Below are positions 3,333-37,599 of a DNA stretch of 53,468 nucleotides, in pieces. The position numbers and the translations under genes were made by a program. The DNA comes from Malacoraja senta. Its lineage: Eukaryota. Positions within the stretch are counted from its first letter, which is position 1; each line of letters starts with the position of its first letter. Where the stretch lies: contig JAXLNO010004858.1 in the NCBI GenBank assembly GCA_038087875.1, positions 1-53,468 of the forward strand, given 5' to 3'. The notes beneath the pieces were generated by a model. That model saw only the letters and a program-made list of their open reading frames with translations, was not told the origin of the DNA and did no database searches.

Positions 3333-3679
3333 CCATCTGACCAGGTTAAACATTACACTAACTGACAAGAGATGGCCAAAGGACATAACTGCAGCAAATG
3401 TTCTTTTGGTAATATGTTTAAAGGTGTCAAAACAAATAATAACATTGGGAATTAAAACACATTTGATTACATTCAGTTATCAAACATAATCAATGTTCGC
3501 TCTGAAGACCATGAAGCACAATAGGGTCAGGGGTGTGTGGAATCAGTGTGGGGTGGATAGATGGCGGGGGGGGGGGGGGGGGTGAGAAGGCAATCGGTGC
3601 GGAATGTATGGATTGAGGCAGGTGATTAGTACGTGTTGGTTGGAGTATGTAAAATTGTGAGAGGAGAGCACGGGGGATG

Positions 3680-30480: not shown

Positions 30481-31249
30481 AGTCACTGTCGTAGCCTGAT
30501 GTAGCTAGTCACGTCAACTGTTGCCGATGGTCGCCAGCTGTCGTAGTGTGAGTCTCCATTTTCTCTTACATCGGTTGTTTCGACAATAATCGACTGGACA
30601 CCTGGGTTGGTTTAAATGTACATTTATTCAGCAGGAGTCTTTACACAGGTTAGCAACCTAGCAAAGAGTCAAGCTCAATGCCTTTATTCGTAATGCCTTA
30701 TATACTTTAAGGCTACGGTTTATGCCTCCCATATTACTGAAACAAAGCAACAGACACGTACGCAATGGTCAGGATAACAGGCACGTACATATTGGGAGGT
30801 GTTATTTAGTGGAACAATACTAGAGATAAGACAGGTACATTCCTCAGACTTCTGGGCGCGGCGGTTTGTATATTCCTCAGACTTCTGAGAGCCAGCCATC
30901 TCAGTCAGACGGGTGCGGGTAATACCATAGTCGCGAATATGCAGTAACAGCAGGACAATGTGTATTTCTCCTGACCACAACTTCTTGAAACCGGCAGCTA
31001 CATATTAAGCAACTTTGGTCAGCAGACATTTTATGTTTTAATCCAGTCCACCTGGCCAAACCATTTTACCTTCACAGAACAATCTTACAGCGTTTATTCA
31101 AGATTTACATTCACAGTAACATGTTGCCAGTAAGGTCGTAGCTTGTTGTCGGTATGGTCATACATTGTCGTAGATTGTCGCCGATATAGGTGTAGATGGA
31201 CTTCATTCATAGCATCACGACTGGCTGTTGTAGCTTGACTTCTGTGCTC

Positions 31250-31448
31250 TATCTACCTCATTGGAGACCCTCGGACTATCTTTGATCAGAATTTACTGGT
31301 TTTATCTTGCACTGAACTTTATTCATGTTATTCCCTTCATCATGTTTCTGCTCACTGTGCTCGATTGTAATCATATATTGTCCGTCTGTTGTCTGGTTAA
31401 CATGCAACTAAAGCTTTTCACTGTACCTCGGTACATGTGACAATAAAC
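31250..31448 (+). mobile_element. LINE/SINE 3' UTR fragment
   Basis: Ends ...CACTGTACCTCGGTACATGTGACAATAAAC, like other retroposon tails in the window. Confidence 0.5.
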
Positions 31449-31539
31449 CCGACTCACTGTCTCTCAGTCCTCTCATTGATGTGGATATCTGCACTAATTG
31501 GTGTCTCTCAGTCCCTCTCTCTCACCAGGATATCTGTAC

Positions 31540-31589
31540 ACCTGGCAGGGGAGAAACCTTGATCACCAAGGAGGTTCTCCCAGGACGAG
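31540..31589 (+). ncRNA. U1 snRNA-derived fragment (about nt 7-56, stem-loop I) at the 5' end of a Tx1 LINE; not a complete U1 gene
   Basis: ACCTGGCAGGGGAGAAACCTTGATCACCAAGGAGGTTCTCCCAGGACGAG matches recalled human U1 at 44/50. Confidence 0.85.
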
Positions 31590-31748
31590 TATTTGAGTAA
31601 AAGAGACTCTCTGTTCTTATTAGAACAGTTCTGGCGGCCCCTTGGGGACAATCAGAATCAGAATCAGTGACGAGGAGTCGGTCGGCTGCGGGCTTAGAGG
31701 TGGATCCATGCTGGTTGGGCAACCAACCTAACACCTCATTCAGCCACA

Positions 31749-33225
31749 ATGGCAGCAGCAACTGGAGCGGGAGTACAGGGTATCCGCAATACCCTGAGAA
31801 TCAGCGTTAAGGACCTCAGCAAGGGGGTTCCCTTCTCACGGGACCTGTTCGTGAAGAAGGTCTTGCTAGAGGCCTGCAAATTTGAGGCCAAGGACATCTA
31901 CTGCCTCCAGGAGTTCCCGGGTAATGGATACATTGATGTTACCTTCAAGTATCCGACGGGATGGCAAAAGTTGATGGAAGACTTCCGGGAGAAGGGGAAT
32001 GAAGCTCCGCTGCCGCTCTTCATCCCCCCCACCCAGAAGGAAAGGATGATCACGTTGCACATGTTCAACCCACATGTGACCGTAGTGGATGTCCTCACCT
32101 TCCTTGCTCGTCATGTCGAGGGAGCAGGGAACTGTGTGGACATAAAGGACCTGTACGGGATCTGGACGAGCAAGCGGCAAGTGAAGGTGAAGCTGAGGGT
32201 GGACAAGAACGGAGCCATCATCCACCCTCCCTCGTTGTTCGCTATCAGAGGGAACCGAGGGTACATGAGCTACACGGGGCAACCCAGGCTGTGCAGGAAA
32301 TGCAACAAGCCTGGGCATGTGATGGTCCAATGCACTGCAGTTGTCAAAGGACTGTCAGGCCAGCAAGAACTGCAACCTGTGTGGGGAGGCAGGCCACCTT
32401 TACAGGGCCTGCCCTAAAAGAGCCTGCACCTATGCACAGGCGACAAGAGGGGCTGCTGCCAGCACCCCCAGGGTGGGTGAGACACCCCTCACCATTGCCA
32501 AGACTGCAGCAGAAAGGGGGAACAGGGACGATTACAGCCCGACCACCTCGAGCCCCCAAGTGCCGGAAGGAGACCCCCATCACCCTGCCCAGGAGGGAGA
32601 GTCGATGGAGGAGGGGGGACAGCAGGAGAAATGGACGATGGTTATGTACAAGAAGCACCAGAGGGTTCAGCCGAAAGAGCCGAGGTCGGAAAGGGCTGGT
32701 AAGTCCAAAAATAAATCCCAAAAAAGATCTTTCTCCCTGACAGAAGGCAGCAACCTCTCCTCGTCGGAGGATGAGGCGACCTGGAAGTCCCAACGATGGA
32801 GGCAGAGGAAGAAAACAGGGGAGGAAAAGAGAAAGGCCACGCCGATCATCCCCCAGCCCCAGGAGACCGAGAGCAGAGCAGCGGCCGAGGGGCTCCAGCG
32901 CCAGGACATCGGAAGCAGTGCAGAGGCCGAGGGGCTACAGCCCCTGGAGACCGGGATCATCGCAGCGGTCGATGGGGCCCAGCTCCGGGCAACTGGGAGC
33001 ATTGCAGCGGCCAATGGGCCCCAGCTCCGGGCGACCGGTAGCAGCGCAGCAGCCGATGGGCCCCAACCCCGGGCTTGCAGGAGCAGTGAACCAGCCACCG
33101 TACCCCAGCTACGGAGGAAGCAGCGCGCCCTGAAGCGGGTGGAACGAGTAGGCCCCTCCCAACGACACCTTGGGTTACACCACAGGAAACCCACCTCATT
33201 GAGGATGCCGGCACTGGGTTCCTGA
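31749..33225 (+). pseudogene. Tx1 ORF1 with CCHC knuckles, frameshifted
   Basis: CRKCNKPGHVMVQC and CNLCGEAGHLYRAC; the middle knuckle appears partly deleted near 32345. Confidence 0.85.
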
Positions 33226-33301
33226 GCCCAGGAAAGCTGAGGCAATTCACCGAAGCGGTGGGCATGAGGGGACACGAGAATGGTCAGTGACTCTAAAGAC
33301 A

Positions 33302-36300
33302 ATGGAGATAAAACTGGCATCTTTAAACGTGCGCAGTATAAAGAGCACTGGGCGATGTGTAAATGCCTTGCAGTACCTGGCCAAGGTCAAGGCAGATGTG
33401 ACTTTTCCCCACGAGTGCGGGCTGCCGCACCTCCGCTGCTATCGGAGGTGGTCGCGATGGTGGCCCCACGGACTGGTAGTGTGGTCGGGGGGCAATGACT
33501 GTTGCGATTCCGGCCTGGGGATCTTGCTGCGGGGAGGGAACTTCGCCATCGCTGAGGTCAGGGAGGTGGTTGGGGGGCGTCTCCCCGTGGTGGATGTTAT
33601 GTACCGTGGTTCTACGCTCCAGCTGATTAATGTGTATACCTCACCCGTGCAGAGCGAGCGGCTGGCCGTTCTCCAGCAGCTCCCATCGCTGCTGGCCACG
33701 TCCCGGCAGCTCGTTCTGGCCGGTGACTTCAACTGCATCATCGATGCGGCTGGACGATCCGGCAGTGCCGACAACAGACTGGACAGCACGTCCAAGTTCC
33801 TCATGGAGACGGTAAAAGACGCAAAGCTGCACGACGCCTTCAGCAACCATGCAGGCAGGTCCCAGCTGCATTTCACCTGGTCGAGATCGGACGGTTTAGC
33901 CCGACCCCGGATAGACTTCGTCTTCACGACGAAGGCCGTCACGGTGAGACACACCGACCTCACGCCGGTGTTCTTCTCTGACCACTGCCTCCTTCGGGCT
34001 TTCTGTCACCTACAGGAGGACCGGAAGGCAGGCAGGGGGACGTGGAAGTTAAATATGAAGCTGTTGACCCCAGAGAACGTTGAGGAGCTAAAGAGGGACT
34101 ACGCATGTTGGAGAACGGTGAGGCCCCTCTTTGACTCCCCGACACGCTGGTGGGAAGCAACCAAGGAGAACATTAAGAGGTTCTTCATAGTTAAAGGGGT
34201 TCAGAGAGCAAGACAGAGTCAGAGGGAATTGTGCCAACTCCAGACAGATTTGCAACAACTGCTCCTTCTGCAGTCGAGAGGGGTGGATGTGAGGGAGGAA
34301 CTTAGAGAGGTGAAGGACCGGCAAGCTCGGCTCTTTACGTCTGAATCCTCCGAGATCATCTTCCGATCCAGGGTCCGCCATGTGCAGCAGGATGAGACGT
34401 GCTCACGTTTCTTCTTCCATAAGGTTCACAGGGGAAGCTCTGTGATGAACAGCCTTAGGGAAGAGGACGGCTCGGTAACATCCTCGCAGACGGACATGCT
34501 GAGGATCTGCAAATCCTTTTACACGGATTTGTACGACAAAAAGGCCACAGACAGCACCGCCTCCCAGAACTTCCTGTCCTCTATCACGGAGGTCTTGGAG
34601 AACAGCAAGCGGGAGAGTCTGGACCAACCACTGACCCTAGAGGAGCTGACTGGCTCCATCCGTTCCTTTGACTCGAGTAAAACTCCCGGAAACGATGGCT
34701 TACCGGCCGAGTTGTATTCGGCTCTGTGGGACTGGGTGGGCCAGGACCTGCTGGAAGTGTACAACGACATGCTTCTAGCCAGCAGCATGTCAGACTCCAT
34801 GAGGAATGGCAGCATCACCCTAATCTACAAGCAGAAGGGGGAGATGAAGGATATAAAGAATTGGAGACCCATCACATTGTTGAATGTAGATTACAAGATC
34901 CTGTTTAAGGCCATCGCCAACCGGGTCAAGTCAGCTCTGGAACAGGTGATCCAACACAAACCTGTGCTGTACCTGCTGCTGAGAGATACCATCGCCTACG
35001 TGCAGGACAGATGGGTGGATGCCTGCCTAGTCAGCTTGGACCAGGAGAAGGCCTTCGACAGGATATCGCACACGTTCATGAGGGACGTGCTCTCCAAAAT
35101 GGGTTTTGGGGAGGGAATCCGAAATTGGATCAAACTGCTCTACACCAATATCCGTAGTGCAGTCCAAATCAATGGGTGGGAATCAGACAGTTTCCCTGTA
35201 AGGTCTGGAGTCAGGCAGGGGTGCCCTCTCTCTCCTGTCTTGTTTATCTGCTGTATTGAACCTTTTGCCGAGTCCATCAGGAATATGCGAGCATAAGAGG
35301 AGTGACATTGCCAGGCAGTGGGGGCATTCGTCAAAATTTCCCTGTACATGGACGATGTCGCTGTCTTCTGCTCGGATCCAGGGTCGGTCCGCAGACTGAT
35401 TAGTATCTGCGACCAGTTTGAGTCGGCCACGGGAGCCAGGGTGAACCGCAGGAAGAGCGAGGCCATGCTCTTTGGCAACTGGCCCGACCGAATTTCTGTC
35501 CCCTTCACCATCAAGCCTGACTTCTTGAAGGTGCTGGGGATCTGGTTCGGGGGGGCTGAGGCGTGTAACAAGAATTGGCTGGAGCGGATAGTCAAGGTGG
35601 GGAAGAAGCTGGAGCTGTGGAGACAACGCTCCTCTCCATAACCGGAAAAAATGTGGTCATCAGGTGTGAGGTGCTCTCGGGGCTGCTGTACTTGGCGCAA
35701 GTGTGGCCTGTCCCTCCCTCCTACGCCACAGGGATCACTCGGGCCGCCTTCCAGTTCATCTGGGGGTCGAGGATAGACCGGGTGCGACGGGCCACAATGT
35801 ACAAGTCAGCAGACAACGGGGGTAAAAGCGTGCCCAACGTCGCCCTCACCCTGATGGCCACCTTTGTGTGTGGCTGCATCAGGCGGAGTGTAGAGCCAAG
35901 GCACATGGGCACCAAGTGTCACTACCTGCTGAAGGATGCGAAGGATGGGCCTGGCGCAGATGCCACGCAATGTGCCAGTCAGCTGGACATTGCTGCCCCA
36001 TCTGTCGTCTGTGGAAAGGTTCTTCCGGACCAACACCTTTGACCACATGTCCATTGGGCAGTGGTCAGCACGGAACGTCCTGCAGGCACTGCAGGGAAAG
36101 GACTCGATTGATCCGGTGGCGTGGTTCCCAGAGCAGACTGCCCAGCTTGTCGGGCAAAATGCCTCATCGCCAGAACTCACCAACAAGCACCAAGACCTGG
36201 CTTGGCTGGCGGTGAGGGGAGCCCTCCTAGTCAGATCTTTCCTGCACCGTCGGGAACCTCACTGCCAGTGCACGGGACGGCTGCTATGGAGAGGAGACGG

Positions 36301-36650
36301 TTGCCCACCTCTTCACAGAGTGTGGATTTGCAAAAAGAATCTGGAGACGTATGCAGGGATCCCTGGCACGCTTTATCCCGAACAGCTCCGTCACAGAGGA
36401 CTCTGTGATTTACGGACTGTTCCCAGGGACACATTCAGAGACTGACATCGAATGCTGCTGGAAGGTCATCAACTCGGCAAAAGACGCTATTTGGTCTGCC
36501 CGAGCGTTCTTCACCACCCAGCAGAGCGAGATGTCCGTCAGGGAATGTTGCCGACTGGCCCGCTGCAGACTGCAGGAGTACGTGCTGAGGGACGCACTGA
36601 AGCTTGGTGCAGCCAACGCCAAGGCTCGATGGGGGAGGGCCACAGTCTAG
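33302..36650 (+). pseudogene. Tx1 ORF2 (APE endonuclease, RT), several frameshifts
   Basis: LASLNVRS, GDFNC, SDH; DQEKAFD, GVRQGCPLSP, YMDD. Confidence 0.9.
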
Positions 36651-36937
36651 GGTCCTCCCGCTGCTGGACATGGGGGGCACGGTATGGTGGAGACGCCCCT
36701 CAAAATAAGGGAAGGTATCCCACGCCAGGGGGCCACATGAGTGGCACGGGTGGGGGACGGATTTGTGGAATTTGAAAAAAAATGTATTAACTGCATTGGA
36801 CAATTTGTATAGCCTCCGAAAATGCTGGATTAATTTTTCGCACGGTTCACGTATTGTATATATTTATTACTTGAATAAAGTATATTTTGAAATTTAAAAA
36901 AAAAGGAGTGTCCAAGTGTGTGTCAGTGCTCAGAGTG

Positions 36938-36983
36938 ATGGGGGTCGCTGCTTATCTCTGTCTCCTTCTGTCCTGTCTGCCAG
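36938..36983 (+). pseudogene. IgW: IgW VH leader exon (MGVAAYLCLLLSCLP)
   Basis: Hydrophobic signal peptide, G|GTGGGC donor, 101-nt intron to the V exon. Confidence 0.88.
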
Positions 36984-37084
36984 GTGGGCATCACCCCCAC
37001 TCGGGGCCGAGCTACTTCTTGGACACTCTTTCACCCTCTGCCTCTTCAACTTTTTATTCAACATTGTTTCTCTTTTATTGGCAG

Positions 37085-37384
37085 GCGTTCGATCCGCGGT
37101 CGTGCTGAATCGTGGCAAAGTCTGGAGGGTCCCTCAAACTGACCTGTGCAACCAGCGGGTTCAGCCTCAGCAGCTACACTGGGTGAAACAGGTCTCCGGG
37201 AAAGGGCTGGAGTGGGTGGCGAGGATGAGGTATAATGGTGACAAAAATTACGCACCTGTCTTCAGCGGCCGATTCGAGGTTTCCAAGGACATCAGCAATG
37301 TCTATCTCCAAATGAACGGCCTGAGACTTATTACTGTGCGAGATGACAACTGGGGTGCAGGAACCTCGCTGACAGTGACTTCAG
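37085..37384 (+). pseudogene. IgW: Germline-joined IgW V-J exon with frameshifting deletions
   Basis: GVRSAVVLN, SLKLTC, WVKQVSGKGLEWVA, RFEVSKD, YYCAR fused directly to NWGAGTSLTVTS|GTAAGA; no RSS; close to recalled skate IgX. Confidence 0.88.
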
Positions 37385-37599
37385 GTAAGACCAATTCCTC
37401 AATTCCATTTTACCCAGTTGTATTTCATTAATTTATGGTCTTTGGAAATTCTGTAATTGACCTGAACTCGGTGAGATATTTGGAACAATTGCATGGATTT
37501 CCCGGAGACTGGCGGGTTTCTGCAGTTAGAATCTACCCAGCAACAGTACATTTCCCACCGCGTTGAACTGCCCCACAGGCTGTTCTTTCCCTGAGTCTC

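What the first reader, a model, noticed from the sequence alone, without database searches (positions are those of the whole stretch)
31540..36904. Full-length Tx1 LINE capped by a U1 snRNA-derived head
Seen: 50 nt matching U1 nt ~7-56 (44/50 versus recalled human U1) lie directly upstream of the 5' UTR, ORF1, ORF2 and poly(A) of a complete Tx1 element. The rest of U1 does not follow the poly(A), so this copy is not an insertion into a U1 gene. Established: some Tx1 families are target-specific (Keno inserts into U2 genes), U1/U2-headed SINEs occur in crocodilians, and snRNA-LINE template-switch chimeras occur in mammals. Inference: master copies may sit inside U1 genes, use the external U1 promoter and so carry a U1 head; alternatively the family has captured stem-loop I. 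I cannot tell whether this family is already catalogued.
Basis: partly seen in the sequence, partly recalled or inferred. Interest (0 to 1): 0.85.

Follow-up and report, generated by a model that had tools for sequence, protein, structure and literature searches.

The report
U1-headed Tx1 LINE in a skate
A dead, nearly full-length Tx1-type jumping gene really does begin with the first ~50 bases of U1 snRNA; the head is shared by other copies in several skate species and most likely comes from relatives that insert into U1 genes, a variant of something already described in crocodilians.

Summary
Window 31540-31589 is U1 snRNA nt 7-56, joined directly to the 5' UTR, ORF1, ORF2 and poly(A) (36896-36904) of a Tx1-type LINE, and no U1 3' half follows.

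The copy is not intact. ORF1 has one frameshift. ORF2 has one stop and at least three frameshifts. The head lacks the first ~6 nt.

The head belongs to the family and is not a one-off:
- Contigs from runs of at least three organisms (one apparently the window's own) bridge the same head-UTR junction from other loci, and flanks before 31540 end in ATACTT (U1 nt 1-6).
- Leucoraja (L001) and Amblyraja (L016) loci carry U1-headed copies.

The 5' UTR behind the head is U2-derived, sister copies carry U2 nt 1-50 heads, and more distant relatives in a teleost and a sturgeon sit behind U2 nt 1-34 like Keno.

In Amblyraja, the poly(A) of a sister copy abuts U1 nt 40-164 plus a 3'-box-like motif. Three different junctions end U1 at nt 54-56. 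This fits insertion into U1 genes with a 17-bp target duplication and read-in from the U1 start. Promoter use is untested.

U1-headed Tx1 families are published for crocodilians (Kojima 2015), and this scan noted another U1-headed Tx1 elsewhere in this genome. I rate it a new variant of a known kind, of moderate interest.

The parts
31449..31541 (+). 5' flank: two units of a ~45-bp repeat (GATATCTGYAC...TGTCTCTCAG...CACCAG). The insertion point is after GTACAC, and AC at 31540-31541 could belong to either flank or head.
   Evidence: Motif positions. In other genomic copies of the repeat, GATATCTGTACAC continues with TGACCG.TGTCTCTCAG (loose ends and joints).
31540..31589 (+). U1 snRNA-derived head: U1 nt 7-56, comprising part of the 5' arm and stem-loop I. 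It is 5'-truncated by about 6 nt relative to the family.
   Evidence: Rfam U1 E=9.8e-5. 43/50 identical to a teleost U1 gene. nt 40-56 are identical to the Amblyraja U1 (sequences). Other copies have ATACTT before 31540.
31590..31650 (+). 5' UTR core shared with the U2-headed sister subfamily. It contains a U2 nt 36-49-like motif, TCTGTTCTTATTAG.
   Evidence: Alignment A3. 13/14 match to U2. Homologous stretches in L002 and L016 score as U2 in Rfam at 61-61.5 bits, above the gathering score of 46.
31651..31668 (+). Copy-specific (AATCAG)3 that replaces the family sequence GGGCCGTGGAT.GCGGAGCG...
   Evidence: Depth falls to about 0 here, and loose ends on both sides give the family sequence. 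L001 and L016 carry the family version.
31669..31748 (+). 5' UTR segment present in the window and L001 (absent from L016c) and absent from the short-UTR sister subfamily.
   Evidence: Alignment A3. L016c lacks window 31652-31737.
31749..33225 (+). ORF1: two ZCCHC3-type RNA-binding domains plus CCHC knuckles. It is broken by one frameshift within 32323-32414.
   Evidence: Pfam PF23057 (1.1e-16), PF23058 (1.5e-22) and zf-CCHC. Frames. Fold hits to ZCCHC3 and Xenopus Tx1 ORF1, none to L1 ORF1p.
33287..36650 (+). ORF2 with an AP-endonuclease domain (about 33300-34020) and reverse transcriptase (about 34850-35545). It has a stop at 35294-35296 and at least three frameshifts further on.
   Evidence: Pfam Exo_endo_phos and RVT_1. 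Frames. Best reviewed match is Xenopus Tx1 ORF2 P14381 at 26% identity.
36651..36895 (+). 3' UTR with AATAAA at 36874-36879.
   Evidence: Sequence. 85.7% (L001) and about 79% (L003, L016) identical over the last 100-250 nt, within which the terminal GAATAAAGT.TATTTTGAAA is conserved.
36896..36904 (+). Poly(A) tail of 9 nt. The 3' flank starts GGAGTGTCC, with no U1 continuation.
   Evidence: Sequence. No U1 hit in an Rfam scan of 36700-37500.

Best explanation
This is a dead, dispersed copy of a skate/ray Tx1-clade LINE of the Keno (snRNA-gene-targeting) lineage. Its family carries a U1 nt 1-56 head on top of an older U2-derived 5' UTR.

The most likely mechanism has four steps:
1. The lineage's endonuclease nicks snRNA genes: U2 at nt 34|35 and U1 at about nt 39|40.
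2. Second-strand cleavage 16-17 bp downstream gives a target duplication (U2 nt 35-50; U1 nt 40-56). A full-length insertion therefore sits directly behind U2 nt 1-50 or U1 nt 1-56.
3. Transcription of the interrupted snRNA gene from its external promoter starts at snRNA +1 and reads into the LINE. The RNA, and every full-length daughter copy, then begins with the snRNA head.
4. Daughters that land outside snRNA genes, like this one in a 45-bp repeat just upstream of an Ig VH-like segment, keep the head but lose the promoter, and they decay.

Shown here:
- The head is family-wide and starts at U1 +1.
- A sister-subfamily copy is inserted at U1 nt 39|40 of a U1 gene.
- The U1 and U2 endpoints are constant across different junctions.
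- The more distant relatives whose DNA could be read (one teleost, one sturgeon) sit behind U2 nt 1-34.

Inferred:
- The 17-bp duplication, because no copy was seen with both U1 halves.
- Use of the U1 promoter.
- That this route, rather than template switching, produced the head.
For: Family-wide head:
- Contigs from other loci bridge 31589/31590. X22 record 2 is 1648 nt with an unrelated upstream part. X22 record 3 is an exact 58-mer at about twice single-copy depth. X23 records 9 and 10, X6 records 17 and 18, and X8 records 25 and 26 also bridge it.
- Indels at 31586-31589 are seen in four runs.
- Loose ends before 31540 end in ATACTT in X22, X23 and X8.
- L001 (Leucoraja) aligns from exactly 31540.
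- L016:5382- (Amblyraja) has the same GGACGAG|TA junction.

U1 gene as target:
- L016 poly(A) is followed by GGTTCTCCCAGGACGAG GCTATCCC... through the Sm site and stem-loop IV (Rfam U1 79.5 bits, above the 69.5 gathering score), then ATTTAAAAATGAAAAATAGA.
- The U1 endpoint is nt 56 in the window/L016c junction type, nt 56 in the L016a remnant (CAG GACGAG CGTCAGGGG), and about nt 54 in L001.

U2 analogy:
- Heads end at U2 nt 50 in L002/L004 and in L016a, with different sequence following.
- 3' junctions read poly(A)|ATCTGTTCTTATC (L003) and, in a teleost, poly(A)|U2 nt 35- with U2 nt 1-34|5' UTR (L006).
- A sturgeon copy (L005) has a U2 nt 1-33 head.

Tx1-type proteins.

Literature:
- Keno targets U2 (PMC4494074, PMC4640811).
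- The same paper cites R2 for dependence on co-transcription with the target.
Against: - No locus was obtained with U1 nt 1-56 plus a PSE upstream and U1 nt 40- downstream of one element.
- The one U1-gene insertion seen belongs to the short-UTR sister subfamily, is internally deleted, and has a chimeric 5' end (ORF1 fragment, U2 nt 5-50, GACGAG). That chimera shows template switching also occurs in this lineage.
- Flanks upstream of ATACTT are heterogeneous (agreement 0.57-0.74), so many headed copies are dispersed.
- Neither the window copy nor L001 has a clear duplication.
- No RNA evidence was obtained; the run kinds were unknown.
- Kojima (2015) explains the crocodilian heads by template switching.
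Confidence: 0.6

Rival explanations
1. Template-switch origin, as proposed for crocodilian SINEU and Tx1-Mar. During reverse transcription the enzyme jumped from the 5' end of the LINE RNA onto U1 snRNA and copied it to nt 1. One such chimera became a source element, or heads are re-added repeatedly.
For: - Kojima 2015 (PMC4494074, sections 16-19) documents recurrent 5' addition of U1/U2 sequence, and a U1 part of about 53-58 nt followed by U2 in SINEU-2.
- L016a shows a chain of ORF1 fragment, U2 nt 5-50, a U1 remnant and the 5' UTR, which is best read as serial template jumps.
- L001 has U1 followed by U2 nt 24-47.
- Heads start at the exact RNA 5' end.
Against: - Three different junctions stop at U1 nt 54-56, and two stop at U2 nt 50. 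That is expected for a site fixed by target cleavage, and less so for jumps onto a folded RNA.
- A sister copy is physically inserted in a U1 gene 17 bp upstream of that endpoint.
- A chimera that lost the external snRNA promoter has no evident way to be transcribed from U1 +1, yet the head persists in several species.
Confidence: 0.28
2. Captured functional module. Whatever its origin, the U1 5' arm and stem-loop I are kept by selection because they help the LINE RNA, for example through U1-70K binding, nuclear handling or start-site definition.
For: - Stem-loop I pairing is 93.9% kept across a teleost U1 gene, the window and L001.
- Pair 26-39 is A-U, U-A and G-C in those three.
- The head alone folds into the stem-loop.
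- The head persists across species.
Against: - With n=3, 105 of 500 shuffles reach the observed covariation score.
- Fold z-scores are only -0.7 to -2.0.
- Variants could simply be inherited from different U1 genes.
- The L001 loop has diverged from the U1-70K-binding loop.
- Sister subfamilies do without U1.
Confidence: 0.1
3. One-off chimera, or chance adjacency of a LINE to a U1 pseudogene fragment.
For: Only one copy lies in the window, and no duplication brackets head plus element.
Against: The same junction occurs at other loci in at least three organisms and in Amblyraja, and a U1 head occurs in Leucoraja.
Confidence: 0.02

Closest known systems
Crocodilian Tx1-Mar families with U1 or U2 heads (Tx1-2_Crp, Tx1-2B_Crp, Tx1-4_AMi, Tx1-11_Crp) and SINEU-2 (Kojima 2015, PMC4494074)
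   Same: - Autonomous Tx1 LINEs related to Keno whose 5' end is U1-derived.
- The U1 part is about 53-58 nt and is followed by U2-derived sequence in SINEU-2.
- U1 and U2 pieces are layered at the 5' end.
   Different: - The host is a skate or ray, whereas the paper found no SINEU outside crocodilians.
- No Mariner target preference is seen for this copy.
- Here a relative is found inserted in a U1 gene at a position that accounts for the head's 3' end. The paper invokes template switching and leaves transcription open.
Keno, the U2 snRNA gene-specific Tx1 lineage (Kojima and Fujiwara 2004, as cited in PMC4494074 and PMC4640811)
   Same: - ORF1 and ORF2 architecture.
- Relatives at 33-42% ORF1 identity sit exactly behind U2 nt 1-34 (L006, L005).
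- The skate 5' UTR carries U2 motifs, and sister copies insert at the U2 nt 34|35 motif.
   Different: - This copy is not in a U2 gene.
- The skate heads run to U2 nt 50 or U1 nt 56, implying 16-17-bp duplications. The teleost locus (two adjacent copies) shows none.
- A U1 target has not been reported for a non-LTR element in the papers read. PMC4640811 lists only Dada-U1 for U1.
snRNA-L1 template-switch chimeras of mammals (Buzdin 2002 and Garcia-Perez 2007, as cited in PMC4494074)
   Same: snRNA sequence is fused 5' of LINE sequence, and the snRNA 5' end is complete in the family.
   Different: The mammalian chimeras are single events with variable junctions and mostly truncated LINE parts. 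Here the junction is inherited by many copies in several species and lies at the start of the 5' UTR.
R2 and other target-co-transcribed LINEs
   Same: The proposed reliance on the promoter of the interrupted multicopy RNA gene.
   Different: R2 is processed out of the rRNA transcript by its own ribozyme. Here the target's 5' part stays on the RNA and is copied into daughters.

Membership tests
Tx1 clade of non-LTR retrotransposons | ORF2 with an N-terminal AP-type endonuclease followed by reverse transcriptase, and a poly(A) tail | tested here: met
   Pfam Exo_endo_phos and RVT_1. A9 tail after AATAAA.
Tx1 clade of non-LTR retrotransposons | ORF1 of the RNA-binding-domain plus CCHC-knuckle type, not the L1 coiled-coil/Transposase_22 type | tested here: met
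   PF23057, PF23058 and zf-CCHC. Fold search returns ZCCHC3 and Xenopus Tx1 ORF1 P14380 and no L1 ORF1p.
Tx1 clade of non-LTR retrotransposons | RT groups with Tx1 rather than L1 in a phylogeny (RTclass1-type test) | tested here: inconclusive
   The best reviewed match is Xenopus Tx1 ORF2 at 26% identity, but L1 ORF2 proteins follow at 23-24%. No labelled reference set was available for a tree.
Keno (U2-gene-specific Tx1) | Copies inserted at one site of U2 snRNA genes, flanked by the U2 5' and 3' parts | tested here: not met
   The window copy lies in a 45-bp repeat with no U2 flanks. Relatives do meet the feature: L006 has U2 nt 1-34|element and poly(A)|U2 nt 35-.
Keno (U2-gene-specific Tx1) | Descent from the U2-targeting lineage (U2-derived sequence at the element's 5' end) | tested here: met
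   13/14 U2 motif at 31609-31622. Homologous UTRs behind U2 nt 1-50 heads.
U1-headed Tx1 (Tx1-Mar type, Kojima 2015) | The 5' end of the family, not of one copy, is U1-derived | tested here: met
U1-headed Tx1 (Tx1-Mar type, Kojima 2015) | [quoted passage not shown] | not testable with these tools
   No Repbase sequences were available. The flank here is a short tandem repeat, not an evident Mariner.
snRNA-LINE template-switch chimera (one-off) | A unique junction per locus with a variable snRNA 3' endpoint | tested here: not met
   The junction is shared across loci and species. Endpoints are nt 54-56 in three junction types.
SINEU | Short (<500 bp) non-coding retroposon with a U1 or U2 head | tested here: not met
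   The element is 5.4 kb with ORF1 and ORF2. L001 is a 1.8-kb internally deleted derivative.

The most novel reading that the evidence does not exclude
Skate Keno-like Tx1 elements use U1 genes as a second natural target: a nick at nt 39|40 and a 17-bp duplication up to nt 56. They are expressed from the U1 promoter. The ~55-nt U1 heads of crocodilian Tx1-Mar and SINEU have the same target-derived origin. Interrupted snRNA genes would then be the hidden source loci and promoters of all snRNA-headed retroposons, which answers the question Kojima left open of how SINEU is transcribed.
Probability: 0.35. Interest if true: 0.7.

Novelty: new variant of a known kind. Interest (0 to 1): 0.55.

Why it matters
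snRNA-headed retroposons are a puzzle because U1 and U2 promoters lie outside the transcribed region, so a head by itself should not drive transcription.

A LINE lineage that inserts into U1 and U2 genes at fixed sites offers a simple answer. The head's end would coincide with the edge of the target duplication. The interrupted snRNA gene would be the source locus and would lend its promoter.

The finding would also add U1 to the short list of snRNA genes targeted by non-LTR elements, and it extends U1-headed Tx1 from crocodilians to cartilaginous fish.

For this particular copy nothing functional is at stake: it is a decayed insertion just upstream of an Ig VH-like segment.

Tried and rejected
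- Rfam at gathering threshold on the whole window found nothing. The U1 head is visible only in a short-region E-value scan.
- A self-BLAST found no second copy in the window.
- Looking for a target-site duplication gave only 5-mers, which is chance level, for the window and for L001.
- Protein routes to more copies were poor:
  - Few close homologues are on record.
  - Five of twelve contig look-ups returned no DNA: four because the Mobula chromosome files are too large, and one (basking shark) because the gene range was too long.
- A search for RNA runs returned runs of unknown kind, and no read-laying run was left, so there is no expression evidence.
- The protein atlas gave only generic endonuclease/RT clusters.
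- The covariation test on stem-loop I was not significant with three sequences.
- Paper searches found no description of Tx1 heads in cartilaginous fish. No supplement of Kojima 2015 is held, so the crocodilian head sequences could not be compared base by base.
- Rejected: a one-off chimera, and an insertion of this copy into a U1 gene.


Full report
**1. What is at the coordinates**

Window 31540-31589 reads as U1 snRNA nt 7-56.
- An Rfam scan of 31300-31900 gives U1 as best hit (26.4 bits, E=9.8e-5). Model positions 1-48 (5' arm and stem-loop I) align at high posterior, and the rest is filler.
- The stretch is 43/50 identical to nt 7-56 of a complete U1 gene found on a teleost contig (L006:1090-1253, 164.7 bits).
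- Its last 17 nt (31573-31589) are identical to U1 nt 40-56 of an Amblyraja radiata U1 gene part. I read this from the sequences printed; that script's own comparison was set one base off and printed False.

Directly behind the head come:
- a 5' UTR (31590-31748);
- ORF1 from 31749, with two ZCCHC3-type RNA-binding domains and CCHC knuckles;
- ORF2 from 33287, with AP endonuclease and reverse transcriptase;
- AATAAA at 36874-36879;
- A9 at 36896-36904.

The 3' flank (GGAGTGTCC...) is not U1.

The copy is not intact, however.
- ORF1 shifts frame within 32323-32414.
- ORF2 has a stop at 35294-35296 and at least three further frame changes.
- No target-site duplication is recognisable.

**2. Is the head a property of the family?**

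Yes. Logan contigs of runs from several organisms were laid on the region. Organism E's exact-match contigs suggest it is the window's own species.
- The unique flank 31475-31539 has depth 35-70 in X22.
- Depth rises to 180-390 from 31541 on, and stays at that level (about 230-290) at the start of ORF1.
- Contigs from other loci bridge the head-UTR junction:
  - X22 record 2 is 1648 nt, and its first 1565 nt do not match the window.
  - X22 record 3 is an exact 58-mer (31540-31597) at about twice single-copy depth.
  - X23 records 9 and 10, X6 records 17 and 18, and X8 records 25 and 26 also bridge it.
- Loose ends before 31540 end in ATACTT in three runs, with unlike sequence further upstream. 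ATACTT is U1 nt 1-6, so full heads start at U1 +1 and the window copy is about 6 nt short.
- Its junction with the flank repeat (GATATCTGTACAC|TGACCG... in uninterrupted units) allows a 2-nt microhomology.
- Two X6 contigs leave the head at 31589 with GCTATCCC, which is the real U1 continuation.

Three fetched loci confirm this.
- L001 (Leucoraja erinacea) is an internally deleted copy that aligns to the window from exactly 31540.
- L016:5382-9097 (Amblyraja radiata) carries the head from U1 nt ~19 and the same GGACGAG|TA junction.
I did not check that locus.

**3. A second layer: U2**

The 5' UTR core behind the head contains TCTGTTCTTATTAG. This is a 13/14 match to U2 nt 36-49 (about 0.005 such matches expected by my estimate).

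A sister subfamily shows the connection. It is about 78% identical to the window in the 5' half and 87-90% in ORF2.
- L002 and L004 carry U2 nt 1-50 in front of the same core (Rfam U2 61.5 bits, gathering score 46).
- L016a carries U2 nt 5-50 (61 bits).
- L003 holds two tandem copies. The poly(A) of the first abuts ATCTGTTCTTATC (U2 nt 35-47) at the head of the second.

More distant relatives behave like Keno.
- On teleost contig L006, one copy ends poly(A)|U2 nt 35-. The next begins U2 nt 1-34|5' UTR, inside a U2-U1-U5-U2 gene cluster.
- A sturgeon copy has a U2 nt 1-33 head.

So the window's element belongs to a snRNA-gene-targeting Tx1 lineage. In L001 the U1 head is followed by U2 nt 24-47 and then the core, which means U1 was added on top of an older U2 remnant.

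**4. Where the U1 head most likely comes from**

In L016 the poly(A) of a sister-subfamily copy (ends at 3448) is followed at once by GGTTCTCCCAGGACGAG GCTATCCCATTGCAC... This runs through the Sm site and stem-loop IV (Rfam U1 79.5 bits, above the gathering score of 69.5). About 3 nt after the U1 end comes ATTTAAAAATGAAAAATAGA, which resembles the snRNA 3' box as I recall its consensus.

The 3' junction of a LINE marks the nicked target, so this is an insertion into a U1 gene at nt 39|40.

The heads end 17 nt further on.
- nt 56 in the window/L016c junction.
- nt 56 in a U1 remnant inside L016a (TTATCAG GACGAG CGTCAGGGG).
- About nt 54 in L001.

Three different downstream sequences share the same U1 endpoint. 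That is what a cleavage-defined boundary predicts: a 17-bp duplication of U1 nt 40-56. It parallels U2, where the head ends at nt 50 and the 3' junction is at nt 35, giving 16 bp.

A full-length insertion would then sit behind U1 nt 1-56. A transcript from the U1 start would carry exactly the head seen here.

What is missing:
- a single element with both U1 halves;
- a PSE upstream of it;
- any transcript evidence.

Template switching is the published explanation for crocodilian heads (PMC4494074). It clearly also happens in this lineage: L016a's 5' end is a chain of an ORF1 fragment, U2 nt 5-50 and a U1 remnant. It remains the main rival, and I put the two at about 0.6 and 0.28.

**5. Stem-loop I**

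The head folds into the U1 stem-loop. Pair 26-39 is A-U in the teleost gene, U-A in the window and G-C in L001.

With three sequences this is not significant: 105 of 500 shuffles do as well. If heads are sampled from different U1 genes, the covariation would belong to U1 rather than to the LINE. I give a selected function low odds.

**6. Classification**

- ORF2's best reviewed match is Xenopus Tx1 ORF2 (26% identity), only just ahead of L1 ORF2 at 23-24%.
- ORF1 matches ZCCHC3 and Xenopus Tx1 ORF1, and no L1 ORF1p.
- Together with the Keno-type relatives, Tx1 clade is well supported, although no RT tree was made.
- Homologues come from skates and rays (Leucoraja, Amblyraja, Mobula, Rhinoraja) and more distantly from sharks, sturgeon and teleosts.
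- The window's species is probably a skate. That is an inference.

**7. Novelty**

[quoted passage not shown] He also reports that SINEU-2 is U1 (about 53-58 nt) plus U2, that heads were added repeatedly, and that no SINEU was found outside crocodilians. How they are transcribed is left open.

PMC4640811 lists only Keno and Utopia (U2), Dada-U1 and Dada-U6 as snRNA-gene-targeting transposons.

The kind is therefore known. What is new here:
- the host group;
- the U1-on-U2 layering in an autonomous element;
- the physical link to a U1-gene insertion site that accounts for the head's boundary.

I could not search Repbase or Dfam, so the family may already be catalogued.

**8. Verdict**

This is a real, family-level U1 head on a decayed Tx1 copy. 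It is a new variant of a known kind, of moderate interest. Its main value is a testable, target-derived explanation for snRNA-headed retroposons.

Noticed in passing
window 31249-31448: Very high-copy SINE-like repeat. Contig word depth is 10^5-10^6 in every run. In other copies the unit ends near 31446-31448 and continues as a TAAAC-type repeat.
   Followed up: partly
window 31449-31541: Two units of a ~45-bp repeat (GATATCTGYAC ... TGTCTCTCAG ... CACCAG). It is moderately repeated in the runs and is the site of the LINE insertion.
   Followed up: partly
window ~37090-37400: Immunoglobulin heavy-chain V-like segment. One frame reads WVKQVSGKGLEWVARMRYNGDKNYAPVFSGRFEVSKDISNVYLQMNGLRL...WGAGTSLTVTS, which looks like a germline-joined V(D)J. 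FR1 (GGSLKLTCATSGFSLSSY) is in another frame, so it is probably a pseudogene. The LINE sits about 190 bp upstream.
   Followed up: partly
L003:7908-19199 (Leucoraja JAMYXN010000931.1): Two near-full-length Tx1 copies lie head to tail. The first ends poly(A)|ATCTGTTCTTATC, which is the U2-like motif at the head of the second. The elements therefore appear to target the U2 remnant in each other's heads. This fits earlier scan notes of stacked Tx1 insertions at one short motif.
   Followed up: partly
L016:1-3450 (Amblyraja CM021366.1): The 5' end of the copy inserted in the U1 gene is a chain: an ORF1 fragment (window 32009-32194 equivalent), then U2 nt 5-50, then GACGAG (U1 nt 51-56), then the 5' UTR. 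It looks like serial template jumps or repeated snRNA-gene insertions.
   Followed up: partly
L016:5116-5400: A truncated copy's ORF2 3' part is fused to the U1 head of the next copy through the shared letters CAGGGAA / CAGGGGAGAA.
   Followed up: no
L006 (GCA_009362195.1 VOSZ01000056.1, filed as E. coli): A fish-derived contaminant contig in a bacterial assembly. It carries a tandem U2-U1-U5-U2 snRNA gene cluster with Keno-type Tx1 copies in the U2 genes at nt 34|35. Several other Tx1 ORF1 homologues carry bacterial or MAG labels.
   Followed up: partly
window 36905-36915 and L001:8294-8303: The 3' flanks of the two dispersed U1-headed copies (GGAGTGTCC and TGAGGTGCTC) resemble U1 nt 37-47 (GGAGGTTCTCC). 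L001 matches GAGGTTCTC at 8 of 9 positions. This may be residual preference for U1-like sites. With only two cases it is a lead only.
   Followed up: no
L001:6526-8290 (Leucoraja CM054041.1): A 1.8-kb U1-headed derivative that lacks window 32568-36336. It could be a non-autonomous offshoot, and it is annotated in NCBI as 'ZCCHC3-like'.
   Followed up: no
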